From assembly GCF_036321535.1 (NCBI RefSeq), contig NC_087444.1:80414001-80478000 (forward strand): 64,000 nt of DNA. Direction: 5' to 3'. The stretch comes from Camelus dromedarius. Taxonomy: Eukaryota. The number at the start of each line of letters is the position of its first letter. Positions within the stretch are counted from its first letter, which is position 1. Both the position numbers and the translations under genes were made by a program. Shown here piece by piece: positions 16,378 through 64,000 of this stretch. The notes beneath the pieces were generated by a model that saw nothing but the letters and a program-made list of their open reading frames with translations, did no database searches and had not been told where the DNA came from.

Positions 16378-17035
16378 AAGAAAAGTCGAGCCACATATAT
16401 CTGGAGAGAACTCCAAATTGAAGAGTTNNNNNNNNNNNNNNNNNNNNNNNNNNNNNNNNNNNNNNNNNNNNNNNNNNNNNNNNNNNNNNNNNNNNNNNNN
16501 NNNNNNNNNNNNNNNNNNNNNNNNNNNNNNNNNNNNNNNNNNNNNNNNNNNNNNNNNNNNNNNNNNNNNNNNNNNNNNNNNNNNNNNNNNNNNNNNNNNN
16601 NNNNNNNNNNNATTATCATATTAAGTGAAGTTAAGTCAGGCAGAGAAAGAAACTATGGCTTGATATCACTTATATGTGGAATCTAAAAAAAAAATGATAC
16701 AAATGAACTTATTTACAAAACAGAAACAGACTCACAGACATAGAAAACAAACTTATGGTTACCAAAGGGGAAAGGCGAGAAGGATAAATTAGGAATTTGA
16801 GATTTTCAGATACTAACCACTATATGTAAAATAGATAAACAACAAGGACCTACTGTATAGCACAGAGAACTACATTCAATATCTTGTAATAACTTATAAA
16901 GAACAGGAATATGAAAAATAATATGTATATATACATTTATGACCGAATTACTATGCTGTACACAAGAGACTAACAGAACATTGTACGTCAACTATACTTC
17001 AACAACAACAACAAAAGAAACAAGAAAAAAAGGAA
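16378..17035 (+). mobile_element. LINE-1 3' end with A-rich tail, spanning an N-gap
   Basis: atcacttatatgtggaatctaaaa...acagactcacagacatagaaaacaaacttatggttacc...actatacttcaacaacaacaacaaaag. Confidence 0.85.
16428..16611. other. Assembly gap (184 N)
   Basis: Run of N. Confidence 1.
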
Positions 17036-39221: not shown

Positions 39222-42200
39222 TTACTCCGCGCTGTGGACACGCTGGTGCTGGATGAGCTTGGTGCTCTGGTGGAAGCGGCGGCCACAGTCCTGGCAAGCG
39301 AAGGGCTTCTCGCGCCTGTGGGTGCGCAGGTGCTGTGTAAGCGTGGGCCTCTGGCGGAAGGCCTTGCCGCACTCAGGGCAGGCGTAGGGCCGCTCGCCCG
39401 TGTGGATGCGCCGGTGTTGTGTGAGATTGGCGTGCTGCCGGAAGCTCTGGCCACACTCCGGGCAGGCGAAGGGCCGCTCGCCCGTATGGATGCGCTGGTG
39501 CTCGGTGAGCCTGGAGACCTGCGTGAAGCCTAGGCCGCACTCGTTGCAGTGGTAGGGCTTCTCGCCTGTGTGCGTCCGCTGGTGGCGGGTGAGCTTCAGA
39601 CGCTGGCTGAAGCGCTGGCCGCACTCCGGGCAGGCGAAGGGCTTCTCGCCTGTGTGGACGCGCAGGTGCTGCGTGAGCGTGGGCCGCTGGCGGAAGGCCT
39701 TGCCGCATTCGGCGCAGGTGAAGGGCCGCTCGCCTGTGTGGATGCGCCGGTGCTGCGTGAGGTTGGAGCGCTGCCGGAAGCTCTGGCCGCACTCGGCACA
39801 GGCGAAGGGGCGCTCGCTGCTGTGTACGCGCCGGTGCTGCAGCAGCACTGAACGGCGGCCGAAGCGCTCGCCGCACTCCACGCAGCCGAAGGACTTGTTG
39901 CCAGTGTGCACCGCCTGGTGCTCCAGCAGCACGGCACGCCGAGCGAAGCTCTCACGGCACTCGCTGCAAGGGAAGGGGCCTGGGGGCTCAGGTGCGCCTG
40001 GAGGCGCGGGAGGTGTCGCGCCGGGGCCTGGGGGGTCGCCGTGGATGCGTTGGTGCTGCAGCAGGTTGGAGCGCTGCCGGAAGCTCTGGCCGCACTCGGA
40101 GCAGTGGAAGGGCTGCTCGCCCGTGTGCACGCGCCGGTGCTCCTCCAGGCGCGCGCTGCGAACGAAGCCCTGGCCGCAGTCGCCACACACGAACGGCCGC
40201 TCCTCGGTGTGAGTAAGCTGGTGGCGCAGCAAGTGCGAGCTCCGGCTGAAGCTGCGGCCGCACTCGCCGCACACGAACGGCCGCTCTCCCGTGTGTATCT
40301 TCTGGTGCCTCAGCAGGTTGCTGCGTTGGCTGAACACCTTCCCGCACACGTCGCAACGGCCACCTCGCACGGCTCCACCGCCTGTGCTGGGGCGACCCCG
40401 ACCCCGGCTCCGGCCCCTGGGGGCGCGCCAGCGAGCAGCGGCCAGCCCCGGGCCCACGCCCTGGCAGGCGTCATTGGTGAGGCCCTGCTCAGCTACTGGG
40501 CCGCTAGGGAGCACAAGCGCTTGTGAGAAGCCACCTTCGCGGGAGGGCGATTCGAGTCGGCCCCTGAGGCTGGCTACGCCGAGGTCCCAGGGGATGTGGA
40601 GGTGGGGGCTCACAGTGCCCGGGCCAACAGAAACACTGTCCATCTGGAGTGTAAATCCTGCATTGCACAAGGAGACCCCTCACTCATGATGGAACCCACT
40701 TGTCCCCGGACCCACTCCAGCCCTGGGGAAAGGGTATCAAGTAGAGCAACCTGAATCTGACCAAGGAGGCGGGACAGACGTGGTGCTGCTGGGGCGGGGA
40801 TTCTATCCAGGCAGGCTTTCCTAAGGAGGTGACAACTAGACAGAACCTTGCCGGAGGTGGAAGACTGAAAAGCTGGGGACGACCTCTATAGATCTGACTT
40901 GGGTTTGCAAAACTGCCTTTCTGGAAGGGCAAAAGTCGGGCAGGTGGCCACTGCACTGTCTAGGTGGTGATGGTTGCCACAAATGCAGAGGAGTGGGTTG
41001 GTCTGAGGGAGGCTGAAAAAGTGGAGCCAACAGGAAGGGAATGAGGGACGGGAGGGAGGCAGGGGATACAGGCGCCAGGACTTTTGCCTGTGGTGCCTTG
41101 CCTGAGATGCCCACGGGGCGTCTGAGGGACCGACACCACGTGCAGGCTGTGTGGCACAGAATTTAGGGGCCCAGTCTTCAGAGAAATGTGAACGTGGGTG
41201 CCATGGCATGTACATGGCACATGGAGCCCTGGGCCTGCCTGTGATCAAAGAGGGGTGGGTGTCTGGAGGAAAGGAGCAGGTCTCAGCCATGCTGTAAGCA
41301 GGCCATCATCCGAGGCTGGGTGAGGGAGGAGGTGCGGGCGGAGGCAACAGACAAGGAGGAAGCCCCGAAGAAGTTAAACCAGGGAGACTGAGATAGCAGC
41401 AAGGGCTTCCGTAGGTGACAGAAAACGCGTATGCTGTCAAAGAAAACTCAGACAAATTATACTGCATCAGAGGCAATCATTTGTGCTCAGCAAAAACAAC
41501 CTTGGAGTCAAAAAATGAATGACAAACTGAGAAACTCTCCAGAGGCAAAGGGCCAGTTAACAAAAGTAAACGGTGCCCACCAATCAACAAGAAAAACCAA
41601 CGACCTGACAAAGGACAGGAAGAGGAAATGTAACTGAGGCTTAAATCCCTTAAAATACGCCCAGTCCCCTCCTAATAAGAAAACCGCGTCTTAGAGCCGT
41701 ACTCCAGGAACCTAGGCATCTGTGTGCATTGCTGGTGAGCATAAACAGAAGCCAGGGTGGCAAAATACATCAAAATGACAAATTTCCCACAATCTGATCC
41801 AGCAATTTCACTTCTAGGTACTTCTCTGACAGTTGTGTTTCCCCCGTGGGAAATGACCTGTGTAGGTGGTTTCTCGGTTCTCACTGAAAAATGACCCAAA
41901 GGAATGTCAGTAGGAGTCTGGGCGGATAAACAGGGGTGCCCCTAGTGACCATACCCAGGCTCTACGCCGCTGTCCAGAGAGGGCGCTGGCTGCCATGTGT
42001 TGAGGTGGGAAGATGCCCGGAAAATGTCAGGTGTGGAACAGGTGAAGATTAAGTATGGATTTATGTTTTAAAGACCGGAAACGAGTATACGTCTGAATTT
42101 GTGTTTGTTTTTCTATACACAGAACCCTTCTGGAAGGACACACCGAAAACTGGTGATGCGAGCTGTTGGGAAGCAGGACTGTGTGACACCAGCAGGGGAG

Positions 42201-45200
42201 GGGCATTCCACTGTGTACTCCCTTGTGCCTTTTAAATTTCCTAACATGTAGATGTATGAGCTATTCAAAATGTTCTCATGATTGGGTGGGAGGGTACAGC
42301 TTAGAGGCAGAGTAAGTGTTTAGCATGCACGAGGTCCTGGGTTCAATCCCCAGTACCTCCATTAAATTAATAAAGTTGATTACCACCCCTTCCCCTAAAA
42401 AAAGGCCTGAAAAAACATTCTCAATGAAAACACTGGGTGCACAGAGGACGCTGAGTTGAGGGCAAGGGGAGACGCCTACAGACCTGATGGTCCAAGGGAT
42501 GAATCTACATCCCTGAGACAAGGACCTTATGAGAAAGGAACGAGCTCAGACCCTAACTAATAACTAACAAGACACACAGCACGTGGGGAATTCTGGGTAA
42601 CAATGGTATCTATTTGAATTTGTTTCATCCTGAAACAACATTAAAAACCACAATAAAGGTTTTGTTTTGTGTTTCTTCAAGGCATAAAGTCCACAAAGAT
42701 GAAGAGAAGAGGAAACAAACAAAACCCCGACATTTTCTGCTCAGGAAAGCAAGTGGGAAATGGTAACTGTAGAGCAGACTGGAGAAGGTGAATATGAGCT
42801 AGCAGTGGAGAAAACTGACAAAAATCAACTTGTTTTACCCCAGAGGCTGGACAAGCTTAGGAGCTGAAGGTACCAGGTCCCTCGGGCCATGCAGGTGAAG
42901 CGGCAGGGTCCCTGCACAGAGCTGCCCTGGACTACGTCTGCACAGAATTCTGAGAAGGCTGTGGGCCCTGCTGCAACCCTGATCCTGGAGCCCTTCTCCC
43001 ATCCTGGCAAAAGGCTGGGTTGAGGGTGGGAAGCTGCACTGAGGAAGTCGTGGGAGTAAGGGAGGTCACACTGGGTGCTAAGATGCCAGCCTCTCTCCTG
43101 GGATGCTGAAAAGAGGCTCGAAGTGCCTTCTGGGAACACTCAGAGGAAGGAACTGAAGATAATCCCAGCAAGGCTGACTCAAGGCAGCCCAGCCAGACTG
43201 CCCAATGAATCCTCCAGTAGCATCCACTCATGCACCCCCACCCTCTCATGTCCCCTAAGAGGTAGGTCTCCCCCATGTCCCTCCCTGCCCTGGTTAGTTG
43301 TCCTGGCCACTATGGCCCTCCTCCACCTGCTCAGAGCTGCCAAATTTGTGGTCCCCTGTCTTACACATAAGCAGACAACTTGGAGGAGTCAGAGACCATA
43401 CTGGGAGAAGAAAACTTAAAAAACAAGTTATTGTCATCCTCAGAAAAATAAGGAAAGACGTTACAGCTATAAGTAACAACAGAAGGTCGTTATAAAAATG
43501 AACATTCAGGGAATAAAAACACTCCTGGAAAGGAAAACTATCATAGTAGGTAAGAAAATCTCAAATGAATGTCTGGAAGATGTAACTGAAGAAATTTTCT
43601 GGAAAACAGAGCAGAAAGTAAGGGATGGGGTATCACAACAAAGAGAACATTTGAAGACCTGTCCAAGAGGCCAATAACCAAGTAACAGGCATTCCAGAAA
43701 TAAGAGAATGAAACAACAGAGGAGAAGGAAATCAAACAATTCAAGCCCATTTCCCACAACTGAAAAATGGAATTTCAGACTGAAAGGGCTCACCAACAGT
43801 GGTGATAAAAAAAGGTTTGAGACTGAGTTAATAATAAAAAAAAAAATGCTTCATCCAGCCAAAATTCAATGCAACGTGGAGCATTAGACAAATTGTTCCT
43901 GCTACGTAACATATCCGAGAACAACCTCGTGCACCAAAGTTGACAGGAAGCTCTGGCAGGACAAGGGAGGGAACCAAGAAAGGAGGGTCCAGGGAACAGA
44001 GAGGAAGGGGAGGCTGTCTGGGTGACAGCAGATGGGGTGGTGTGGGAGGTGGATCACAGAGGGTCCCGGACAAAGCCTGACCCCTACGCTGTGTCAGGGT
44101 CCCTCTGCCTGCCCACCCTGTTCACTAACCTGCTGTTCTTGCCAGACCCCAACCCATCTACCCTGGCACCCATCAGTTGGATACCAGCCTGGAATCCGGG
44201 GGCCACCCAAGACAGCAGCACTGGGAGAGGATGGGGGCTTGGGGAACACAAGTCCTGCTCTCAGAGTTTTCACTGGTGGGAGCAGCAGCTGGAGGGGGCA
44301 TGAGGTGAGTGGAGGGCTTGGCTTTTGAGGGCAGAAGATGCTAAAACAGGTTGAATGGGGCAGGGGATACCCAGGGGATAGAGGAGCTCACAGGCCACTT
44401 GAACAGGTCCAGGAGTGGGATGGACAGATGTGCTGCTGCCCATGCAGAGGGCCCTGTGTTACTCACCTGGGGAGAAGATGCTCCCAGCTTCCTCCTGCCA
44501 CAGGGCCCCAGGGTGCTCCCTCCACAGGGGGCCCTCAGGCCCAGTCTCACTATGGGGAGAGGCCGGGTCCAGCGACATCCCACAGCCCTGCAACCACAGT
44601 GGTCACTGCACGTCTGTCTGGCTAGGCCCAGGGAGGAGCCTACCCAACCTCCACCCACTGAGGCTCCCAGCGCAGGGATGGGGCGTGGCTTGTGCTGGGC
44701 TCACCTGGGCCTCCTCAGGTAGGAGCGTGGAAGTGGCCTCCTGGGGGTTGGCTAGAGGCCCAGAATCCAGAAGCTCTGGAGAGGAAGGGTGGGGGGTCAG
44801 GTGGCCCAAGGGTGTCCCCTGCCCTGCTGCCCTCCTCAGTGGTGTGCCAAGTGCTGGGGTCCAGGTGGGGTGAGACCTGGGTGTAGACATGGGGCCAGGC
44901 ACGGCAGGGAGGCTCTAAGGGCTGACACGGGAATGGCGGAGACTGTGGGTGGTCATGTCTGGCACCTGCCTGGGAGGCACACGAGAGAGGGACAGGCCCC
45001 TAGCACTTTGGGTCCTCCCCCAGCTGTGCCCACCCATACTCCAGCCTGCTGTCTGCTCCCCAGCAACTAGCTAATGTCCCTGGGGAGTGAACCCCACATG
45101 CCTCCCACATACAGAAACCCCAACAGCCAGCTCCGTGTCAACAGAGGACATGGAAGGACAGTCAGGCTTGGTGTGCAAGGGATAATGGTGTCCACTGGAT

Positions 45201-46331
45201 GGGAGGGATGTAGGGTCCACTGATGCATGGGAACAGTTCCATCTGGCAGGTGACCGGCCCAGTGGGCTTCAGCCAAGATCCCCTGGTCCATCCACTAAGG
45301 CCCTGGGCCATGCCCACCTTGCCTGTCCTTACCTGGGTCCTCTGTAACCTCAGGCTCCTCTTTCATCCGAAGGCCCAGTGGCGACTCCTGTGTGGCCCCA
45401 GGGGGCATCTCAAGACCAGGTTCCGGAGTCTGAGGCTTGGTTTGATGGAGAGGCTGGAAGTCGGAGGGCTCCATCTTCTCTGATAGCACCTCCTGGCCCT
45501 GCACCTGGACTGTGACCTGGGGAGATGCCCCACCACCATCAGGAGCTCATGCAGAGATTTGGGCTGTATGCAAGCGTGGGGTCCATGGGCATACAGTCGA
45601 TCTCGGGTCCCCAGGGGTGCTGACTCACTGGGTCTTCCAAGGACCCACGTCCACCAGGGACTGAGCCAGGAGTTGAAGGGGCCACCTATAGTTGCTCTCC
45701 TGCTGCCGACAACCAAGGCTGCCTGGTGCCCTCCTTCCCTCCTCACCCTGCTTCCCATGTCTGTGACTCCAGGTGATGTAGCAGTGGGCCAGTGATGCTG
45801 GCCTTGGAACCCTGTCTACCCTGACTGCTATGGTGAGCCCTTCCAAACCACAAGGGACCAATGTCTGGCTGGGTTCAGCACCCCCCAGCACAAGGCAGAG
45901 ATGGATTCTGTTTCAGCTCAGGACCACTGACTCACCCATCTCCGGGGCCCTCCTGGCTCCCGGCGCAGCCCCTCGACCAGGGCAGCAGCCTCTTCAGGAC
46001 TGCTTGGCCGCTGTCCCCGCACGCGGGCCTGGATCTCAGGCGGCAGCGCGCCCAGGAACTGCTCCAGCACCAGCAGCTCCAGCATCTGCTCCTTGGAGTG
46101 CACCTCGGGCCGCAGCCACTGGCGGCACAGCTCCCGTAGCCGGGCCAGGGCCTCTCTGGGACCCACTGCCTCCTCATAGTGGAAGTGCCGGAAACGCAGT
46201 CGAGCGGCCTCGGGGCCAGGATCCCACGGGGCGCCTTCACCCTCCTCCTCAGAGTCCTCCAGCTTCACCATGACAGGCCCCTCATCTTCTGGGGGTGTGT
46301 GGCCTGGGGAGCCCAGTGCTGCGGGCCTCAT
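39222..46331 (-). CDS. MZF1: Myeloid zinc finger 1 (SCAN + 13 C2H2), 735 aa; exons (-) 45936-46331, 45333-45516, 44705-44775, 44467-44587, 39222-40657
   Basis: [32 protein letters not shown]...SCAN...; last exon has 4 fingers, a Gly/Pro spacer ([23 protein letters not shown]), then 9 fingers ending HQRVHSAE*. Total 2208 nt; canonical junctions. Confidence 0.97.
42284..42412 (+). mobile_element. tRNA-derived SINE (camelid Vic-1-like) in an MZF1 intron
   Basis: gggagggtacagcttagaggcagag...gcatgcacgaggtcctgggttcaatccccagtacctcc. Confidence 0.85.
43400..43900 (+). mobile_element. Old LINE-1 fragment in an MZF1 intron
   Basis: A-rich L1 ORF1-like text (ggcattccagaaataagagaatg...atttcagactgaaagggctcacc). 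Confidence 0.5.
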
Positions 46332-47299: not shown

Positions 47300-48260
47300 A
47301 ACCTGAAACCCTGGGAGAAAGTTGGGCCTCCCGTAAGCCGGCCAGCCCTGTGAGGTTTCCTAAACTACATTTACCAGAAGTCTTGGCAGGCACCTTCTGC
47401 TTTAGGGAACCGGGCAGGTCCGGGTGCCGCCATGGCAACGGGGGCGGGGCTGCCAGACTGTCGCCGTGGCAACGCGCAGTAATTGACGAGCCTCGCGCGA
47501 CAGCGCTGGGCCGGTCCACGGGGAGCGCCCAGGCCCCTGCCCCGCGCTCCCGGCCCCACTGGGCCGCCGCCCCGGTCCCGCCCGAACGTTCCCGGTTGAC
47601 GGGCCCCCGCCCTCACCTCCGCGCTCAGCGGGCCGGTCCGCGCTTCTGAGCATGCGCACTCGCCGATTCCCCCTCCCTGGCCGGACTAAGTCTCCCAGAA
47701 TGCTCCACGCACCAGCCTGAGCGCCGCCTTGCCCTCCCCCCAAACCCCGCTGCTTCCCGGGGCAGTGTCGTTCGCAACGCTCAGGTCACACTCCGGGCCG
47801 CGTCTTCCCGCGCTCCCGTCCTCACGTCCAGGCGTCCAGGCGTCCAGGCGCCCGTCGACGCGCGCTAGCTTCTCAGGGGGCAATGGGCGGCAGCACCCTC
47901 TCCCTAACCGCGCATGTCCCCCATCACGTCTCCCTCAATTCTCTGCGGGGCTTTCGAGGATTAGCAGGACTCTGCACCAATCACTGCCCTCGTCACGACG
48001 CCGTCAGCCCCCCATCTCCATGGCAACCGCCTGCGGAGCCTGGGCCACCTCGTCTACCGCCCTCGGGACAGCAGGAGAGCCTCGCCCCCTTTTGCCCTGA
48101 TAGAGGGGCTCGGCCCAGTCCTTTCCGGGGGGTGTGGTCGGCCCCCCTTCCGCGCTTGCGCTGGGCGGCGACGCTCCTTTGTGCTCGCGAGCGGTAGGCG
48201 GGCCCAGACATCTCCATGGTTACCGGTGGGCCGAGCCGTTGGTTTCCAGAGCAACCCTGG
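47300..48260 (-). promoter_or_regulatory. CpG island, MZF1 promoter and non-coding exon(s)
   Basis: CpG-rich; NRF1-like GCATGCGCA near 47650; several X-box (RFX)-like motifs. Confidence 0.7.
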
Positions 48261-49399
48261 GTACCCACTAGTGTCTGAAAGAGGATGGGAACGGTGGGTT
48301 GAGGGCAGAGATGCCGAGCGAGAGGCAGTGAGGAGAGACAGACGCAGAGACTCGGGGGTAGGGGGTGCTGCGAGGAGAGACAGTAAACGTAAGTGAACAG
48401 ACATAGCGACGGAGACACGGGCAGGACAGAAAGACATCGGAGAGGGATTCTACTCTCAGAGAGCTAGACAGTGATGAGAAGACAGAGGGTCAGAGTCAGG
48501 TCTGGGCAGACGTGTGGCAGAACAGTTAGCAAGACGGAGAGATATCAGGGCGGGATGGAGAGGAAAGGAGAGACAAAGAGGGAGAATAGATTTACAGCGA
48601 CAAGATGTGAAGATCGAGATTCAAGGGACAGACAAGGATCAGGAGTACATAAGCAAGAGGAAGAAAGGGACAGAAATTAGAGTCACAGTAAAATGGATCG
48701 AGAGTTTTCAAAGGCTCAGAGAAGGGTGATAGACAGCAAGAAGAGAGACAGATAGAGCTGGAGGGACACTTGAGGAAAACTTGTCCAAAACTTGCCAATA
48801 AGACAAAAAAGATGACTGGAAGACTTCTATGAGTTCCCTAGCACGTCCTCTACCAAGCCTTCTTCAGGTCATCTGATTCCCTAAGCGAAGCAACTCTTTT
48901 TCACTTAACTGCTTTTGATCAGAGTCCAGATACTGTGACATTGGATGCTAACTTGTAAAAGGCTGATAGGTTGTAAGTGCTTTCTGTCCAGTAGAAAAAT
49001 GTACCCCAAGGTTTTTACCACCCTGTAGGACACTAAGCAGGACACTAAGATGCCTTAGCCTGTCCACTGCCCTATAGGGCACTAATAATCCGACTTTGCT
49101 CTTTTATATCAGTGTTCGTTCTTTCTTTCAGCATCTCTGTTGTTCCTCCTCTCTTACCTTCCCGGAACCACCTATATCATCCTGTCACTTCCCACTGGTG
49201 GTGAATAAATCACGTGCTCACTCAGTTTGTTTCCAGCTGTTTTGAAATTTTTATTTTGACAGTCTGAAGAAATCTGGTTCTCCAGAATGGAGGACAGACA
49301 TGGAAAAAGAGGAAACAGTGAGACAGAGCCAAGAAGGGAAGGAGGTAGGATGACGGACAGAAAGAGACTGAAAGTAGATGGCGGGTGAGACTGGAGAGT

Positions 49400-50050
49400 G
49401 AAATAAATCGGCGAGAAAGCCAGCCTTGGAGAGAGACGTCCTGGGGCACCCCCTCCTGGACTCTGCGCTCTGCGGGCTGGCCGCCGAACTACATTCCCCG
49501 GCAGGCTCCGGGGCGACCAGGCGGGGCCCCTAGCCAGCCGTCGGGGGGCGGGGCCCACGCGGCCTCCTCCAATCACGGTCGTCGCTTGGCGACATTCCGC
49601 CTCCGCCGACAAGATGAAGGCTGGGCTCGGCCGCCGCCCGCAAGCGTCGCGTGAGGCAGGAGATACGGACAGCCTGCGGCCCCGCCGGCCTAGTTGAGGC
49701 AGCCGGCCCGTGTCGCGGTCCGGAGGTGAGGGCGCCAGGCCGCGCGGGGGCCTGGGCTTGGGGGTTGGTAGGGGCCGAGGCGTCTGCTCCTTCGGTGCCG
49801 ATGGGGGTAAGAGAACCGATGCGCACGAAGGGCCAATCGGAGCCTTCGGCGGCCCCGCGGCCTTCTGGGAAATGTAGTCTCGCGCCTTCCCGGGCGGCGG
49901 GTTGGTAGACGTTCTAGAGCGGGAGGGACAGAACGAATGAATGTGTGGGTGAATTTAACATACAGTTGTGGGTGAGCGGGCGAAGGCCTGGGCGCGAAAC
50001 AAAGAACAGAGGGAGGGGCGCGTGAGTGGTTCGGAATTCGGGCCTCCTAT
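49400..50050. promoter_or_regulatory. CpG island, probable bidirectional promoter (MZF1 upstream start / TIGD-like gene)
   Basis: CpG-rich; ZNF143-type sites at 49487-49506 and 49863-49879; CCAAT boxes near 49569 and 49832; plus-strand donors at 49651 and 49726. Confidence 0.7.
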
Positions 50051-50809
50051 GAGGCAGGACACCTGTCTCATGCCCACCCACCAAGCAGGTGCAGTCCACG
50101 GGTCCCCGATGGATCTCGTCCTCGGTGCTGTAGACACTCCAGAAATACAAAGACCTGTCAGACAACTGTCCCTGTTTTTTACACGCATTCCTTCAAAATC
50201 ATTTTTACTGTTTTGATCAGGTGCCTCTTTCACGTGTTTGAAGTCCAAGAGGGACAAAGTGAGAGAAGCCTGCCTTTTACCACTATACTTCATTTAATAA
50301 TTTAGTCAGCAAGTGACCACTGGATGCCTTCAAAGTGCCAGGCTCTCTTCCTGGGCCTGGGGACACAGCAGAGCGCTCAGCAGGCACAGCTCCTGCCCTC
50401 AGGCAACGTGCGACCACGCACAATAAAATATAGGCGGGGAGGACCTCTCTGATGAGGTTATTTTTGAGCACAGACTTGCAGAAAAGGGAATAAGCCATGC
50501 AGATGACGGAGAAGGGCCCCCACTGTGCGCCTAGGAGCCACAATAGTAAAGGCTCCGAGTCAGGAGCCCCGAGTCTGCCCTGAGAATGTGGTCAGGAGGA
50601 AGCAAAGGAGAGAAGCAGGCTCTGAGGCCCTTGACAAAGCTGGTGAGGACGGTAGCTTTTACTCAGGCAGAAGTGGGAGGCCTGGGAGGGGCAGAGAGGG
50701 GACTGGATCTGATTTAGTTATTACTGAATCATTCTGGCCTCTATGTGGAGAACTACCTTCCTCCTATATCCCCAGGTACTCCACGGTGGCGGCATGTATT
50801 AAGGAGGTT

Positions 50810-51220
50810 CCCTTCAGTGTTGGTTTCCTGTGACTGCTGTAACATATTACTACAGACTTAGGGTTTAAAACAACACAAATTTATTATCTTGGAGTCTTGG
50901 AGGTCAGATATATGAAGTGGGTCTCACTGGGCTAAAATCAAGGTATTGGCTGGGCTCGTTGGTTCTGAAAGCCCTAGTCTTCAGTGGTCACATTGCCTTC
51001 TGAGTGAATGAAATCTGCTTCCATTGATTCCTCTGATTGTATTTTGGGTCCATTCGGATAACCTGGGATAATTTCCACCACTCAAGATTGTTAGCTTAAT
51101 CACACCTGCAGTGTCCCCTTTGCCATATAAGGTAATTCATTCACAGGTTTCTGGGATTCAGACTTGCATGAGTTTAGGAGCTGTGTTCTGCCTCCCACAC
51201 TGATGTTTAACGTCTCTGAG
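50810..51220. mobile_element. MaLR (MLT1-like) LTR
   Basis: ttggtttcctgtgactgctgtaaca...aaaacaacacaaatttattatctt...ggtctcactgggctaaaatcaagg...atataaggtaa...cacaggtt. Confidence 0.7.
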
Positions 51221-51651
51221 GAGCATGGAGATGCTCCTCCCCCTCATCAGTGTCGGGCAGGTGGGTCAGGATTTCTAGACTTTCTTTGCACCCCCTTGTG
51301 ATTGCAAGAGGTTTGTTGGGGGAAGAGAGCAAAGACATTTTACTGATCTCATGGGCTAAAACTAAGCGAAACGCTTTTCTAGATGCAAAGAACGCTTGCA
51401 AATGCGTACGCAGTGTTTTTAGCATTAGAGAGTAAAGGGACTGGGCGGGCCCCTGAAGCAGTGGCAGTGCACTAGGTCAGAACACGGGAAGGCAGGCTGT
51501 GGTCCAGATTCCTGGGCACTTGCACATTAATGCCCATATGTTCCCCTCTTCAGGCAGAGGCAGGCGTGGCAGGAGAGGCCAAGAGGCTGCGGTTGTGGGC
51601 ACAGCGGTAGCTGCCGTGGATGGGCAGTGGGGAGAGAGCTTGCTGAGGTGC

Positions 51652-53556
51652 ATGGCTCGGGGAGGCGGCATGAAGACAGCCCCCTGCCCTCCGGGGTTGG
51701 GGAAGGCACCCCTCGGTGTTGGCCTCCGCCACAGCGCCAAGCGGGACCGGAAGTCCATCACTCTGCACGTGAAGTTGGAGGTGCTTCGGAGGTTTGAGGA
51801 GGGTGAGAAGTTGACGCAGATTGCCCGGGCCCTGGGGCTGGCCACCTCCACCGTTGCCTCGATCCGTGTCAACAAGGACAAGATCCGGGCCAATTCTCAG
51901 GCAGCTGCGCCTGTCAGCGCCACACAGCTGACTCGCTGCCGTGGTGTGTTGATGGGCCATATGGAACGCCTGCTGAGTCTGTGGATCGAAGAGCAGAAGC
52001 GGCAGAACCTGCCCGTCAGCACACTGCTGATCCAGGATAAGGCACGCCGGCTCTTCGCACAGCTGCAGCATGAGCAAGGCAGTGGCGTCCCCACCGAGAC
52101 CTTTGGGGCCAGCAATGGCTGGTTTGCCCGCTTCAAGTCACGCCACAACGTGCTGTTGACAGATGAGCCGGCCGTGGCTGATGCCCAGGCTGCGGCCTGC
52201 TACCCCCCGGTGCTGCGCTCCATCCTGGAGGAGGGCAGCTACTCCCCGCATCAGGTCTTCAACGTGGATGAGACGGGCCTGTTCTGGAAGCGGCTGCCTG
52301 AGCGCATGCTGCTGGAGCTGGAGGGGATGACTGGGCCAGGGCCCAAGGCCTCTAAGGACCACCTGACCCTGCTGCTTGGTGGCAATGCAGCTGGTGACTT
52401 CAAGCTGAAGCCACTGCTGGTGTACCCCTCGGAGAACCCACGTGCCCTCCGGGGCTGCTCCAAGGCCAGCCTGCCTGTGGTCTGGCGCTCCAACCGCAAT
52501 GACTGGCTGACACCCAGCATCTTCCAGGAGTGGTTTACTGGCTGCTTCTGCCCCGCTGTGGAGAGCTACTGCGCCAGCCACAGCCTCCCGCACCGCGCCC
52601 TGCTGCTGCTGGACAGCGCACCCTGCCACCCGGCCCACTTGGGTGGCCTCTCGGCCCATGTGCGTGTGGAGTTCCTGCCCAAGAACACATCAGCCCTGAT
52701 CCAACCCATGAATCAGGGCGTCATTGCCACCTTCAAGGCCCATTATCTGCGCCGCACACTCAGCCAGCTGGTCCAGGAGACGGCTGGTGCGGACCGGCCC
52801 TCTGTGCGGGAGTTCTGGCGCAGCTATACTGTCATGACCGCTGTAGACAACATCGCTGAGGCCTGGGCAGAACTGCAGCCCGCCACCATGAATAGTGCCT
52901 GGAGAAAGCTCTGGCCTGAATGCGTGCCTGCTGGTGCTGCTGAACCCAATGCTGTACCCCAGCTCCGCCGTAGCATTGTGGTGCTAGCCAGCCACGCAGG
53001 CCTTGGGGGTGTGGCTGAAACCGATTTCACCCCTCTGCTGCAGGCCCATGGGGAGCCCTTGCCTCGCAGCATCCCCCAGGATGTGGAGGATGGGGATGTC
53101 AGTGGCCCTGGGCTGCCCTGGGAGGCAGGGAAATGCCTGGCTTCCAGGAGAGCAGAGTCAGATCTCACGGAGGCCACGGTGGGCGTGGGGACTGAGGAGG
53201 CTGGTGTGGGTGCATTGAGCCCTGAGCACCTGGCACAGGCCCTGTCCCACTTTGCTGCTGGCCTGCGAGTCCTCGTAGAGAATGATCCCAACCGGGAACG
53301 TAGCCTGCGGGTGTCCCGGGGTGTCCACTGTGCCCTCACCCGCCTCCGGGAGCTGCACCGGGAAAAGAGGCGACAGGCTCGGGCAGCTGCATCCTCAAGT
53401 GGCCCCATTGTGACAACGAGGGAATTGGCAGGAAGCCTGTACTCACCCCAGGCGGGGCCTACAAAGGGTGGGCAAGTGGCTAAGGGCACAAACCCTGAAG
53501 GACAGACCTCTTTGGCTGTTCTGTGTGATTTGGGACTTGGGCCTGACCTCAGATGA
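51652..53556 (+). CDS. Domesticated pogo/Tigger transposase-derived protein (TIGD/CENP-B/JRK-like), single coding exon, about 630 aa
   Basis: CENP-B_N/psq HTH (KRDRKSITLHVKLEVLRRFEEGEKLTQIARALGLATSTVASI), Tc5-type HTH (LLSLWIEEQ...FGASNGWFARFKSRH), DDE_1 domain (FNVDETGLFW...LLLLDSAPCH...QPMNQGVI), Tigger-like C-terminus (ENDPNRERSLRV). No stop or frameshift. Splice acceptor at 51552-51553 makes ATG 51652 or 51670 more likely than 51499. Confidence 0.88.
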   Translation: MARGGGMKTAPCPPGLGKAPLGVGLRHSAKRDRKSITLHVKLEVLRRFEEGEKLTQIARALGLATSTVASIRVNKDKIRANSQAAAPVSATQLTRCRGVLMGHMERLLSLWIEEQKRQNLPVSTLLIQDKARRLFAQLQHEQGSGVPTETFGASNGWFARFKSRHNVLLTDEPAVADAQAAACYPPVLRSILEEGSYSPHQVFNVDETGLFWKRLPERMLLELEGMTGPGPKASKDHLTLLLGGNAAGDFKLKPLLVYPSENPRALRGCSKASLPVVWRSNRNDWLTPSIFQEWFTGCFCPAVESYCASHSLPHRALLLLDSAPCHPAHLGGLSAHVRVEFLPKNTSALIQPMNQGVIATFKAHYLRRTLSQLVQETAGADRPSVREFWRSYTVMTAVDNIAEAWAELQPATMNSAWRKLWPECVPAGAAEPNAVPQLRRSIVVLASHAGLGGVAETDFTPLLQAHGEPLPRSIPQDVEDGDVSGPGLPWEAGKCLASRRAESDLTEATVGVGTEEAGVGALSPEHLAQALSHFAAGLRVLVENDPNRERSLRVSRGVHCALTRLRELHREKRRQARAAASSSGPIVTTRELAGSLYSPQAGPTKGGQVAKGTNPEGQTSLAVLCDLGLGPDLR

Positions 53557-53879
53557 GCCTTATCTGATGATGTTTTATTTCTGGAGGAGAGACACTGCCA
53601 CCTCTCACCCATGGTTCTCGTACCTTATGCACTGCCATGTTTGTACAGTAAAACGCAGAGTGTCAGTCTTGGGGAACAAGAGGGTAGAGTTCTCTGATTG
53701 GCAGATGAGCTCCGGGGCCCAGGAGTGCCCATCCATGTCAGAGACACACCCTGTAGCACAGCAGTTGCCAAGCACAGCCCACCAGGGTAGCCTTCCTTGT
53801 GGTGAGGGGCCAGGGCTGAGAGGAGCCTCTATTATTTGCCAACCCTGACCTCTGGTTGCACCGCTGTGCCCCTTCCTAG

Positions 53880-54300
53880 CTAACTGTATTTATTTTTATT
53901 GAAGAATAGTCAGTTACAGTGTTGGGTCAATTTCTGGTGTAATGCGGATTGTTTCAGTTACACATGTACGTATGTAAATTTGGTTTCAGATTATTTCATT
54001 ATAAGTTACTAAAAGATACTGAATATAGTTCCCTGTGCTATACAGTATAAACTTGTTTTATCTGTTTCATATATAGTAGTATCTGCAAATCTCAAACTTC
54101 CAGTTTATCCCTTTCCACTCCCTTCCTCCTCTCCCCAGTAACCATAAGTTTGTTTACTATGTCTGTGAGTCTGTTTCTGTAGTTTTTTTTAAGATTCCAC
54201 ATATAAGTGATATATGGTATTTTTCTTTTTCTTTCTGGCTTAGTTAACTTAGAATGACTATCTCCAGGTTCATCCATGTTGCTGCAGATGGCTAGCCAAC
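53880..54300 (-). mobile_element. LINE-1 3' end fragment
   Basis: gatactgaatatagttccctgtgctatacag...gtaaccataagtttgtt...gattccacatataagtgata...gttcatccatgttgctgca. Confidence 0.85.
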
Positions 54301-57839: not shown

Positions 57840-58235
57840 ATGGCGTCCGACCCAGCATCCATCGATCAGGAAGAGCTCATGGTCATCAAGATGGAGGAGG
57901 ACGAGGCCGCCCCATGGGACCCTATACTGTCCTCCACACCTCAGCCCCAGTTCCTGTTGCCTGGGCTTGGCAAGGATCACAGGCAGCGCTTCCGCAGCTT
58001 CCACTACCAGGAGACAGCAGGGCCCCGCGAGGCCCTGGCCCGGCTGCGAGAGCTGTGCTGCCAGTGGCTGTGGCCTGAGGTGTACTCCAAGGAGCAATTG
58101 CTGGAGCTGCTGGTGCTGGAGCAGTTCCTGGGTGCGCTGCTGCCTGACACCCGGGTCTGGTGGAGTCCCAGCGCCCCAAGAGTGGTGAGGAGGCTGTGGC
58201 GCTGGTGGAGGACCTTGCTCAGATGCAGGAGACCA
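57840..58235 (+). pseudogene. SCAN-domain exon with a 1-nt frameshift (pseudogene or assembly error); possible 5' part of a SCAN-pogo fusion gene
   Basis: gccATGG Kozak at 57840; [21 protein letters not shown]...[61 protein letters not shown], then in the shifted frame [25 protein letters not shown]. Acceptor at 57780-57781, donor GTGAG at 58236. Confidence 0.8.
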
Positions 58236-58889
58236 GTGAGCCCCAAGGGGTGGGGCTGGTCAGGAGGCCTGGGGGCAGGGGACATGCAAGGGGACACAAC
58301 CCCAGGCCCTGAATGCCTGTTCGCTCTGCCCAGGCCCCTGTGTCCTGATAGGTGGGAAGAGGACTCAGAAGTTACGATGTGTTTGGAGATTTTTCTAACC
58401 TCTGAGCCTCCCAGAGATGTGAGCCTGAGGTTGGCATGGCATCACCCCGGGTCACGGTTACTGGGCCTTTGTTCACTTCTATTTCTTCTTCCTCGCAAAT
58501 TCATCAAGTGCACACAGGCCCTGTGGGTCCAGCACGGAAGGGAAATAGGCAAGGTCCCTGGCCTGCTGGAGCCCAGTGGGTTAAGAGCTGGACAGTGAGA
58601 CCTAGTCACAGGTAGGGTGTCCATCTTTCTCCGGAAGTGGGTGGAGGCAAGAAGAGGTGAGCAGGGAGGTCAGCCTTGCTGGTGTGGTTTGCAGTTCCTG
58701 CACCTTGGGCCGTGCGTGTGCTCACATGCTGTGAGGAGGTGACAGCAGTGCAGCAGGCAGAAGAACGGTTGGCTACAGCTATCAGTTCTCCCTGGTGGTG
58801 TTTACTCGTTCACTCACACGTGTCGCTGCAGTTCCTTTGGTCCGCTTGGCTGCCTGTATTAAAGGGTAGAAACTGTAGCACTTAAACAA

Positions 58890-61492: not shown

Positions 61493-61686
61493 GCAGGGTG
61501 TCGTGTGTGAATCAGAGGGCAGGTCCTTGTCTTATCCAGCTCCGTTCCAGGCCAGTGTCTAGCCCAAGTTGGTGCAGAGAATGCTCGGGGACACTTGCCA
61601 TGTGTTGACCTCGGGATTGATTCATTGGCTTGGGTGCCTGACCCTTTGTCCCCGCTAACAATCCTCTCCCTTCGGCACTGACCCAG

Positions 61687-61755
61687 GCCCCTCCTGAGGA
61701 CCAGCAGTCTGGAGACCTGGCAGAGCTGGCTAAGCCCTTCACGGAAGGAGCTCAG
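61687..61755 (+). other. Candidate 69-nt internal exon (phase 0-0; APPEDQQSGDLAELAKPFTEGAQ)
   Basis: Branch-like GCTAAC, pyrimidine tract, CAG acceptor at 61684-61686, strong CAG|GTGAGC donor; open in phase 0. Confidence 0.4.
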
Positions 61756-63815: not shown

Positions 63816-64000
63816 GTCAGGGCCAAGATGCCAGCCGCCCTGAAGTCAGTGGGCAAGGGATGGGAACAAATATTCTCTTCCGGGGCCCGGAGAGAGGGAT
63901 GCCGGCCTCAAGACCCCCATGAAGAGGCTGCTGAGCGCAGGCCAGCGCCGAAGCATCAAGCGGGACCGTAAGGCCATCAACCTGCAGGTGAAGCTAGAGG
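63816..64000 (+). CDS. Start of a second pogo/Tigger-derived (CENP-B_N HTH) exon, 3' partial; apparent 1-nt frameshift at the C5 run 63914-63918
   Basis: From ATG 63919: MKRLLSAGQRRSIKRDRKAINLQVKLE, 15/23 identical to the first TIGD-like ORF (LGVGLRHSAKRDRKSITLHVKLE). Acceptor at 63814-63815. Too short for the supplied ORF track. Confidence 0.75.

What the first reader, a model, noticed from the sequence alone, without database searches (positions are those of the whole stretch)
51554..53556. Intact domesticated pogo/Tigger transposase gene head-to-head with MZF1, with a DD32N catalytic triad
Seen: an uninterrupted ORF of about 2 kb with two HTH domains and a DDE_1 domain. Triad positions are D (GAT 52267), D (GAC 52612) and, 32 residues later, N (AAT 52711; QPMNQGVI where Tigger-type proteins have QPMDQGVI). 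It is GC-rich, has a splice acceptor in front and no obvious terminal inverted repeats, which fits a host gene better than a fossil transposon. From memory, the matching human position distal to MZF1 holds the pseudogene CENPBD1P1/CENPBD2P (MGC2752). Inference: this is an intact orthologue of a gene lost in humans, retained as a DNA-binding protein without transposase activity.
Basis: partly seen in the sequence, partly recalled or inferred. Interest (0 to 1): 0.75.

Follow-up and report, generated by a model that had tools for sequence, protein, structure and literature searches.

The report
Conserved Tigger-derived gene beside MZF1
Next to MZF1 the camel carries a former jumping-gene enzyme (a Tigger/pogo transposase) that marsupials and many placental mammals have kept intact, spliced, expressed and under strong purifying selection, but that has decayed in a rodent, so it is a real and little-studied host gene of a familiar kind.

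Summary
Window 51499-53556 (+) is one open frame with CENP-B_N, HTH_Tnp_Tc5 and DDE_1 domains and a D-114-D-32-N triad.

- **Transcript:** They run on collinearly past the stop. The coding sequence is 51652-53556 (634 aa).
- **Synteny:** intact orthologues lie between MZF1 and a SCAN-Tigger paralogue in otter, cattle, elephant, mole and humpback. In Tasmanian devil the SCAN-Tigger paralogue also follows directly downstream. An intact possum orthologue was fetched too.
- **Selection:** ML omega is 0.09 over 505 codons in 8 species (lnL -6764.7, against -7419.6 at omega = 1).
- **Triad:** DDN is fixed from marsupials to placentals. Non-mammalian relatives have DD32D.
- **Transposon marks:** no terminal inverted repeats and no TA duplication.
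- **Loss:** a ground squirrel has a frameshifted, stop-ridden remnant at the same place. A rabbit has none within 10 kb of MZF1.

So this is a therian domesticated transposase gene. It is separate from CENPBD1 and from its SCAN-fused tandem sister, and it was lost in at least some Glires. RefSeq already models it as "TIGD1(-like)". The pogo-domestication papers I could search do not list it. Orthology to human CENPBD2P fits the literature but was not tested, because human sequence was off limits. DNA binding without transposition is inferred, not shown.

The parts
49400..50000 (+). CpG island holding the promoter and first exon of the gene. It is separate from a second island at 47400-48500 on the MZF1 side.
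   Evidence: CpG observed/expected is 0.86-1.18 with GC 0.61-0.75 in 200-nt bins. Exon 1 of the RNA contigs lies inside it.
49526..49725 (+). Exon 1, non-coding 5' UTR. The 5' end is a minimum. It holds an in-frame stop and a 27-codon upstream ORF (ATG 49614 to stop 49697).
   Evidence: Logan RNA contigs L002-L010 align to 49526/49581/49646..49726 and then jump to 51552. Translation of L009 shows the in-frame stop. The upstream ORF was located.
49726..51553 (+). Intron with canonical GT...AG ends, 1828 nt.
   Evidence: The donor reads CCGGAG|GTGAGG and the acceptor CTCTTCAG|GCAGAGG, and the contig junction was read directly.
51554..54034 (+). Exon 2, which carries the whole coding sequence and at least 478 nt of 3' UTR. 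The true 3' end is unknown.
   Evidence: Nine contigs are collinear over 51552-54034 at 99.84-99.96% identity. They stop inside a repeated element (53890-54257 resembles 16616-17011), so 54034 is probably an assembly break. No AATAAA or ATTAAA was found before 54100.
51652..53556 (+). Coding sequence, 634 aa plus stop. An alternative start at 51670 gives 628 aa.
   Evidence: This is the first in-frame ATG after the exon-1 stop in the spliced RNA. The MA(R/Q)GGGMK start is conserved in placentals. The same 634-aa protein is in NCBI nr, with 634-aa RefSeq models in its 90% cluster for Camelus ferus and Vicugna pacos.
51739..51894 (+). CENP-B_N helix-turn-helix DNA-binding domain.
   Evidence: Pfam PF04218, E 7.7e-9. 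Sequence match to CENP-B(1-129) 1hlv_A, E 4.4e-8. Pairwise dN/dS is 0.00-0.11.
51958..52152 (+). HTH_Tnp_Tc5, the second helix-turn-helix DNA-binding domain.
   Evidence: Pfam PF03221, E 2.1e-15. dN/dS is 0.05-0.23.
52267..52269 (+). First catalytic-position residue, D (ORF D257, protein D206), on predicted strand beta-1.
52354..52902 (+). DDE_1 (RNase H-like transposase core) domain.
   Evidence: Pfam PF03184, E 1.8e-40. The AF2 model's best Foldseek matches are Mos1, Metnase/SETMAR and Sleeping Beauty catalytic domains. dN/dS is 0.04-0.15.
52612..52614 (+). Second catalytic-position residue, D (ORF D372, protein D321).
52711..52713 (+). Third catalytic position, N instead of D (ORF N405, protein N354), 32 residues after the second D.
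   Evidence: N is present in 42 of the 45 orthologue-group sequences (P0001-P0045) listed, marsupials included; one has S and two are fragments that lack the position. D is present in most non-mammalian relatives (8 of 14).
53221..53397 (+). Conserved C-terminal helical hairpin (protein residues 524-582).
   Evidence: AF2 helices at 524-544 and 548-582. The motif is conserved from marsupials to placentals. dN/dS is 0.06-0.20 in most pairs.
39222..46295 (-). Context: the coding exons of MZF1 that were located here, with the zinc-finger exon at 39222-40670 and the SCAN exon at 45960-46295, oriented head-to-head with the gene.
   Evidence: A 735-aa SCAN + zf-C2H2 gene is called on the minus strand in L001.

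Best explanation
This is a single-copy host gene made from a Tigger-family pogo transposase. The transposase was immobilised next to MZF1 before marsupials and placentals split.

Shown: the gene is transcribed from its own CpG-island promoter, divergent from MZF1, as a two-exon mRNA. The 634-aa protein is encoded entirely in exon 2. The protein keeps the paired helix-turn-helix DNA-binding module (CENP-B_N plus HTH_Tnp_Tc5), an RNase H-like core and a C-terminal helical hairpin. All of these evolve under strong purifying selection. The third catalytic aspartate has been asparagine since the therian ancestor.

Inferred: the protein most likely acts as a sequence-specific nuclear DNA-binding factor, a transcription or chromatin regulator in the manner of CENP-B, JRK and the TIGD proteins. 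The crippled catalytic core and the C-terminal hairpin would then serve as structural or interaction surfaces and would not cut and paste DNA.

Also shown: the gene is dispensable in some lineages. It has decayed in a ground squirrel and is absent from the 10 kb upstream of MZF1 in a rabbit. The literature indicates that it is a pseudogene in humans.
For: Domain architecture. Triad D-114-D-32-N, with DD32D in non-mammalian relatives. Spliced RNA contigs from independent runs joining 49725 to 51554; four runs labelled RNA-Seq hold 0.90-0.91 of the stretch's sampled words. Conserved order MZF1(-) | gene(+) | SCAN-Tigger(+) in otter, cattle, elephant, mole and humpback, and gene then SCAN-Tigger in Tasmanian devil. 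Pairwise dN/dS 0.07-0.24 over 505 codons in 8 species. ML omega 0.090, lnL -6764.70 against -7419.59 with omega fixed at 1. The tree gives a clade with SH-aLRT 100 and a marsupial/placental split inside it, sister to the SCAN paralogue (94), and separate from CENPBD1 (99). No TIRs or TSD. The AF2 model shows two HTH bundles and an RNase H-like core, and its best PDB matches are the Mos1, SETMAR and Sleeping Beauty transposase domains and the CENP-B DNA-binding domain. A squirrel pseudogene lies at the syntenic site.
Against: No binding site, localisation or phenotype is known, so the DNA-binding and regulator role is inference from family knowledge. The first two aspartates and the residues around the N are themselves strongly conserved, so some metal-dependent activity cannot be excluded. 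Expression evidence comes from contigs of two studies of one tissue type ('reproductive system') without strand or abundance information, because the read-level check failed. Cetaceans and ruminants have lost the end of the C-terminal hairpin, so that part is not universally required. A homodimer test of the hairpin gave no answer.
Confidence: 0.82

Rival explanations
1. The protein is a domesticated enzyme that still uses its D-D-N site for a metal-dependent DNA transaction such as nicking, cleavage or strand transfer, so it would be more than a passive DNA binder.
For: D206, D321 and the QPM-N-QG motif are almost invariant for more than 150 My. The DDE_1 domain has dN/dS of 0.04-0.15, as low as the DNA-binding domains. 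N at the third position recurs in other retained pogo-derived genes: TIGD7 is DD34N and TIGD6 is DD30N (Gao et al. 2020, PMC7386202).
Against: By established knowledge of Tc1/mariner enzymes, replacing the third catalytic carboxylate abolishes transposition. The sister paralogue tolerates T or S at this position and CENPBD1 tolerates G or S. A deer orthologue has K at the second D and a muntjac has S at the third position. That variation argues the site is not catalytic.
Confidence: 0.12
2. It is a fossil or recent Tigger insertion, or a transcribed pseudogene or lncRNA, whose open frame survives by chance.
For: RefSeq names it after a transposon ('TIGD1-like'). Gao et al. set TIGD1-like clades aside as 'akin to pseudogenes'. 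The reported human counterpart is annotated as a pseudogene.
Against: A frame of about 1.9 kb is open in every Laurasiatherian, afrotherian and marsupial examined, at one syntenic site. Omega is 0.09, and the likelihood ratio against omega = 1 is 2*delta-lnL = 1310. There are no TIRs or TSD. The squirrel copy shows what a real pseudogene looks like: at least 4 frameshifts, in-frame stops and 45-59% identity.
Confidence: 0.02
3. It works only together with its neighbours. It would bind the same DNA sites as the SCAN-fused tandem paralogue, which can pair with MZF1 through SCAN, and would act as a SCAN-less competitor or partner of that module.
For: The three genes have stayed adjacent since the therian ancestor. 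The paralogue's SCAN exon is an inverted copy of the MZF1 SCAN exon, 80.6% identical over 227 nt. Some bat gene models splice this gene's ORF onto the paralogue's SCAN exon (P0020).
Against: The two paralogues are only about 55% identical, so shared DNA specificity is not assured. Camel transcripts run collinearly past the stop without splicing to the SCAN exon. No interaction was tested.
Confidence: 0.12

Closest known systems
[quoted passage not shown]
   Same: Same CENP-B_N + HTH_Tnp_Tc5 + DDE_1 architecture and the same D-114-D-32-X spacing. Its origin is therian and it is lost in most primates and rodents (Gao et al. 2020). It groups with this gene and the SCAN paralogue against non-mammalian transposases (SH-aLRT 91).
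   Different: It forms a separate clade (99) and is only about 51% identical. It is about 542 aa against 634. The third position is G or S, not N. Most camel and other mammal entries are named CENPBD1, whereas this gene is labelled TIGD1(-like).
The SCAN-Tigger fusion immediately downstream (window 57840 onward), probably 'TIGD-G1' of Cosby et al.
   Same: It is the sister gene (SH-aLRT 94) and a tandem neighbour on the same strand. Marsupial copies also carry DDN.
   Different: It has captured a SCAN exon copied from MZF1. It is about 55% identical, and placental copies have T or S at the third position. Cosby et al. date TIGD-G1 to Cetartiodactyla at 65-90 My, whereas the tree here puts both genes before the therian split.
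TIGD6 / TIGD7 / JRKL (retained pogo-derived genes with D-D-N)
   Same: They are domesticated, single-copy, under purifying selection, have two HTH domains plus DDE_1, and have asparagine at the third catalytic position.
   Different: They arose by different domestication events with different spacings (DD30N, DD34N). They are present in humans. The gene here has no Euarchontoglires protein among the listed hits.
CENP-B
   Same: The N-terminal DNA-binding module is homologous (1hlv_A, E 4.4e-8 by sequence, and also found by fold). It too is a pogo-derived host protein with a dead catalytic core.
   Different: CENP-B derives from the pogoR lineage, not Tigger. Its triad is unrecognisable, and it has an acidic region and a proven dimerisation domain. 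No centromere role is implied here.
Human CENPBD2P (formerly CENPBD1P1, MGC2752)
   Same: The literature places it at 19q13.43 with MZF1 and MZF1-AS1, as the last gene on 19q. The camel gene is likewise distal to MZF1, about 42 kb from the chromosome end.
   Different: It is annotated as a pseudogene. One paper states that it 'did not arise through pseudogenization' (PMC11929002). Sequence orthology was not tested here because human sequence was off limits.

Membership tests
Domesticated pogo/Tigger transposase genes (the class of CENPB, CENPBD1, JRK, JRKL, TIGD2-7) | [quoted passage not shown] | tested here: met
   Pfam E-values 7.7e-9, 2.1e-15 and 1.8e-40. The fold matches Mos1, SETMAR and Sleeping Beauty cores and the CENP-B DNA-binding domain.
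Domesticated pogo/Tigger transposase genes (the class of CENPB, CENPBD1, JRK, JRKL, TIGD2-7) | Single orthologous locus with conserved synteny across distant taxa | tested here: met
   It lies between MZF1 and the SCAN-Tigger gene in cattle, elephant, mole and humpback, and beside MZF1 in otter, where tblastn finds the paralogue downstream. In devil the SCAN-Tigger gene follows it.
Domesticated pogo/Tigger transposase genes (the class of CENPB, CENPBD1, JRK, JRKL, TIGD2-7) | Purifying selection on the coding sequence (Ka/Ks well below 1) | tested here: met
   Pairwise values are 0.07-0.24. ML omega is 0.090, and omega = 1 is rejected with 2*delta-lnL = 1310.
Domesticated pogo/Tigger transposase genes (the class of CENPB, CENPBD1, JRK, JRKL, TIGD2-7) | Loss of transposon ends (no TIRs, no TA target-site duplication) | tested here: met
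   The best flank pair matches 14 of 16 bases, reached in 6.5% of shuffles, without TA flanks.
Domesticated pogo/Tigger transposase genes (the class of CENPB, CENPBD1, JRK, JRKL, TIGD2-7) | Expressed as a host mRNA | tested here: met
   Nine spliced contigs from separate runs show the GT-AG intron 49726-51553.
Tigger family of pogo transposases (ancestry) | DD29-36D signature and grouping with Tigger-type transposases | tested here: inconclusive
   The spacing of 32 is shared with DD32D relatives from shark, lamprey and turtle, and Gao et al. assign the sister gene CENPBD1 to Tigger. The third D is N, and no reference Tigger or pogoR consensus sequences were available for a formal family-level tree.
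TIGD1 (the name RefSeq gives it) | Orthology to human TIGD1, a Tigger1-derived sequence present in multiple copies | not tested
   No human sequence was used. Gao et al. describe TIGD1 sequences as multi-copy, whereas this gene is a single syntenic locus of therian age. The name is probably only a best-hit label.
CENPBD1 | Falls inside the CENPBD1 clade with its DD32G signature | tested here: not met
   It forms a separate clade (SH-aLRT 100 against 99), is about 51% identical, and carries DDN, not DDG.
Active autonomous pogo/Tigger transposon | Intact DDD triad, TIRs, TA duplication, multiple copies | tested here: not met
   The triad is DDN, there are no TIRs or TSD, and the locus is a single syntenic one. 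Copy number across the whole camel genome was not counted.

The most novel reading that the evidence does not exclude
MZF1, this SCAN-less Tigger-derived gene and its SCAN-fused sister form one ancient three-gene regulatory module at the chromosome end. The sister borrowed MZF1's SCAN exon, so it can dimerise with MZF1. The SCAN-less copy would recognise related DNA sites, possibly relics of the ancestral Tigger ends, and would tune or oppose the module. Euarchontoglires then dismantled the module. Human CENPBD2P would be its decayed remnant, contrary to the published statement that CENPBD2P is not a pseudogenised gene.
Probability: 0.12. Interest if true: 0.65.

Novelty: new member of a known kind. 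Interest (0 to 1): 0.45.

Why it matters
The standard list of pogo-derived mammalian genes has 12 members (Gao et al. 2020). TIGD1-like sequences were set aside there as pseudogene-like. This locus shows that at least one "TIGD1-like" entry is a genuine gene of therian age, under constraint as strong as in the named members (omega 0.09). It was missed because it is absent or decayed in the model species, human and mouse.

It adds a further case of the recurrent D-to-N fate of the third catalytic residue. With its SCAN-fused sister it gives a natural pair, with and without a captured host domain, for studying how transposase DNA-binding modules become regulators. It also offers an evolutionary origin for the human CENPBD2P transcript, which is under study as a source of microproteins. 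The kind of gene is well known and no function has been shown, so the result is useful but not surprising.

Tried and rejected
- **Read laying:** No read-level depth, strand or end data could be obtained. Those 38 bases were masked in my local BLAST database and were sent to no search tool afterwards. The repeat finder was run beside them, from 50900.
- **The look-up of encoding contigs:** P0001 and P0014 were not on record.
- **Complex prediction:** a homodimer of residues 512-592, the C-terminal helical hairpin, gave no answer (score 0.02). This is neither support for nor evidence against dimerisation.
- **TIR search:** only chance-level inverted pairs were found.
- **Literature searches:** searches for TIGD1-like, TIGD1L, CENPBD2P and MGC2752 found no paper that describes this locus as a conserved gene.
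- **Cosby et al. supplement:** it lists a SCAN-Tigger fusion (TIGD-G1), which fits the neighbour and not this gene.
- **Rabbit:** no remnant lies within 10 kb upstream of MZF1. This may reflect deletion, or a location further away.
- **Steps not taken:** no human or primate DNA was fetched or compared. No 3' end could be defined, because the contigs stop inside a repeat.
Full report
**1. What is in the sequence.**
Window 51499-53556 (+) is one open frame of 685 codons. Pfam finds CENP-B_N (ORF residues 81-132), HTH_Tnp_Tc5 (154-218) and DDE_1 (286-468, E 1.8e-40). The spacing is D-114-D-32-N. Non-mammalian relatives from sawfish, lamprey and turtles have the same spacing with D at the third place, in QPMDQGVI. 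GC is about 0.636 across the ORF.

**2. Gene structure and expression.**
The exact 628-aa product (start at 51670) is carried by one 80.5-Mb chromosome record (GCA_036321535.1, CM070318.1). There the gene lies about 42 kb from the chromosome end. The same product is carried by 12 short Logan contigs of 2.5-2.6 kb from different runs.

Nine of those contigs were fetched. Each is 99.84-99.96% identical to the window and has the same structure. A first block ends at window 49725 and is joined directly to 51554. The contig then runs collinearly to 54034. The junction is canonical, with GT at 49726 and AG at 51552-51553.

Runs labelled RNA-Seq, from two studies of "reproductive system", hold 0.90-0.91 of the sampled words of 51400-53700. 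That is about what a spliced RNA lacking the 154 intronic bases would give.

Exon 1 (at least 49526-49725) lies in its own CpG island at 49400-50000. A second island at 47400-48500 lies on the MZF1 side. Exon 1 carries an in-frame stop and a 27-codon upstream ORF at 49614-49697. The ATG at 51538 is intronic. The protein therefore starts at 51652 (634 aa) or 51670 (628 aa). The first of these is conserved in all placentals aligned.

The contigs end inside a repeated element: 53890-54257 resembles 16616-17011. The 3' end is therefore undefined. I worked beside those bases from then on, and I have no strand or depth data.

**3. Neighbours.**
The minus-strand zinc-finger exon at 39225-40670 is 91-94% identical to "myeloid zinc finger 1" of many mammals. 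The MZF1 SCAN exon is at 45960-46295. The head-to-head arrangement with MZF1 is confirmed.

Downstream on the plus strand lies a second Tigger-derived gene. It has a SCAN exon at 57840-58250, a small exon at 61672-61755, and a transposase-derived exon that starts at about 63865 and runs off the window. Earlier notes of this scan, s1-178573 and s1-178541, treat that gene.

**4. Is it a host gene?**
The protein search returned intact proteins 76-93% identical from camelids, carnivores, bats, equids, cetaceans, ruminants, pig, mole, elephant, aardvark, tenrec and elephant shrew. Marsupial proteins are about 65% identical. Nearly all are labelled "tigger transposable element-derived protein 1(-like)". 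The identical 634-aa sequence is in NCBI nr, and its 90% cluster holds 634-aa RefSeq models for Camelus ferus and Vicugna pacos.

I fetched the loci of seven further species. In cattle, Asian elephant, mole and humpback whale the called genes run in the order SCAN-zinc-finger gene (-), this gene (+), SCAN-Tigger gene (+). In otter the SCAN-zinc-finger gene is called upstream, and tblastn finds the paralogue downstream. In Tasmanian devil this gene is followed by the SCAN-Tigger gene. No neighbouring gene was called in the possum locus.

A codon alignment of 505 ungapped codons from eight species gave these values:
- Pairwise dN/dS is 0.07-0.24.
- The ML estimate of omega is 0.090, with lnL -6764.70 against -7419.59 when omega is fixed at 1.
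- By domain, dN/dS is 0.00-0.11 in CENP-B_N, 0.05-0.23 in HTH_Tnp_Tc5, 0.04-0.15 in DDE_1, and 0.06-0.20 in most pairs for a conserved C-terminal segment.
- Only the first ~29 residues look unconstrained.

No terminal inverted repeats or TA duplications flank the ORF. The best pair matches 14 of 16 bases, a score reached by 6.5% of shuffles.

**5. Family relations.**
I built a tree of 48 proteins. It recovers three mammalian clades, and each has a marsupial/placental split inside it:
- this gene (SH-aLRT 100);
- the SCAN-fused neighbour (100);
- CENPBD1 (99).

This gene and the SCAN neighbour are sisters (94). The three together stand apart from non-mammalian Tigger-type transposases (91). The tandem pair therefore arose before the therian split.

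At the third catalytic position the three clades differ:
- In this clade N is present in all but three of the 45 sequences. A muntjac has S, and two fragments lack the position. A deer has K at the second D.
- In the sister gene it is N in marsupials and T or S in placentals.
- In CENPBD1 it is mostly G, with S, C or A in a few sequences.

**6. Structure.**
An AlphaFold2 model built from a 44-sequence alignment has mean pLDDT 67.8, and the core is mostly at 80-95. It shows two helical HTH bundles (38-85 and 99-164), a mixed alpha/beta RNase H-like core (strands between 202 and 341, with D206 on the first strand) and a long helical hairpin (524-582). Three segments are disordered: 1-33, 466-521 and 583-634.

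The best Foldseek matches in the PDB are Mos1, Metnase/SETMAR and Sleeping Beauty transposase domains and the CENP-B DNA-binding domain. By sequence, only CENP-B(1-129) and a fly HTH protein are found.

**7. Loss in other lineages.**
No Euarchontoglires or xenarthran protein appears among the orthologues. The same database does hold MZF1 from primates, rodents, rabbit, sloth and armadillo.

I fetched the MZF1 loci of a ground squirrel and a rabbit. Both show MZF1, then UBE2M-like and CHMP2A-like genes, close to a chromosome end, and no gene is called upstream of MZF1.

In the squirrel, translated search finds a remnant on the opposite strand about 7 kb upstream of MZF1 (L019:1182-2802). It is split over at least four frame changes, has several in-frame stops and internal deletions, and is 45-59% identical. 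It scores higher against this clade (517-518 bits) than against the SCAN sister (324-339) or CENPBD1 (297). It still shows N at the third position. The rabbit has no detectable remnant in the 10 kb examined.

This is direct evidence that the gene was lost by decay in at least one Glires lineage.

**8. The human side.**
From the literature, CENPBD2P is listed at 19q13.43 alongside MZF1 and MZF1-AS1 (PMC12125321). CENPBD1P1 is the last gene of a terminal 19q duplication (PMC5607249).

A 2025 paper found no nucleotide homology between the CENPBD2P transcript and CENPB or CENPBD1P. It concluded that the gene "did not arise through pseudogenization" (PMC11929002). The present locus suggests a different comparison, against this clade at the protein level, which could overturn that conclusion. 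The comparison remains to be done.

**9. How it probably works.**
These points are shown: the gene is a spliced, expressed, single-copy gene of therian age under strong protein-level constraint. It has intact DNA-binding domains and a fixed D-to-N change at the third catalytic position.

These points are inferred from established knowledge of pogo-derived host proteins (CENP-B, JRK, the TIGD proteins, POGK/POGZ) and of Tc1/mariner catalysis. The protein binds DNA sequence-specifically through its paired HTH module. It no longer transposes. Its constrained core and C-terminal hairpin serve structural or interaction roles. A residual metal-dependent activity cannot be excluded, because the two remaining aspartates are conserved. 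A homodimer prediction for the hairpin gave no answer, and I do not count it either way.

**10. Novelty.**
Gao et al. (PMC7386202) list 12 pogo-derived genes and exclude TIGD1-like clades as pseudogene-like. Cosby et al. catalogue a SCAN-Tigger fusion (TIGD-G1, dated to Cetartiodactyla) that fits the neighbour and not this gene. No paper I could search describes this locus.

The sequence itself is already modelled by RefSeq. The finding is therefore a new, unnamed member of a well-known kind. It is of moderate interest, mainly because it is old, strongly constrained and missing from the model species.

Noticed in passing
window 57840-58250, 61672-61755, 63865-64000 (+): A tandem paralogue: a SCAN exon, a small exon, and the start of a second Tigger-derived exon that runs off the window. 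It matches 738-743-aa SCAN + HTH + DDE proteins of whales, mole and marsupials at about 55% identity to the gene studied. Earlier scan notes already cover it.
   Followed up: partly
window 45971-46197 (-) versus 57986-58211 (+): The paralogue's SCAN exon is an inverted copy of the MZF1 SCAN exon, 80.6% identical over 227 nt. This suggests that the fusion gene captured a duplicated MZF1 exon.
   Followed up: no
window 49614-49697 (+): Exon 1 holds a 27-codon upstream ORF with a good start context (A at -3). It ends 28 nt before the splice donor and is in the same frame as the main ORF. The human CENPBD2P transcript is reported to carry translated short ORFs in its 5' part, but no comparison was made.
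   Followed up: no
L019:1182-2802 (-), ground squirrel, about 7 kb upstream of MZF1: A decayed orthologue with at least 4 frame changes, several in-frame stops and internal deletions. It is 45-59% identical and still has N at the third triad position.
   Followed up: yes
L018:1-10000, rabbit, upstream of MZF1: No remnant of the gene is detectable by translated search in the 10 kb upstream of MZF1.
   Followed up: partly
L016:11617-11907 (humpback); L012 to about 14099 (cattle): Cetacean and ruminant orthologues lose the reading frame at about residue 563, within the second helix of the C-terminal hairpin. In the whale the rest is still recognisable in another frame (56.7% identity), so a frameshift shortened the tail.
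   Followed up: partly
P0030 (Odocoileus), P0031 (Muntiacus), P0049 (Saccopteryx leptura): There are exceptions to DDN within the orthologue clade. A deer has K at the second D. A muntjac and one bat fragment have S at the third position.
   Followed up: no
P0020 (Hipposideros armiger isoform X2), mapped to window 51580-53451 and then 57942-58225: A bat gene model splices out of this gene's ORF, at the equivalent of about 53451, into the SCAN exon of the downstream paralogue. That would give a C-terminal SCAN. Camel transcripts show no such splice.
   Followed up: partly
window 53890-54257 versus 16616-17011: A repeated element in the 3' UTR is about 70% identical, inverted, to a copy elsewhere in the window. 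The RNA contigs break inside it at 54034.
   Followed up: no
They lie in the intron and were not studied or sent to any search tool.
   Followed up: no
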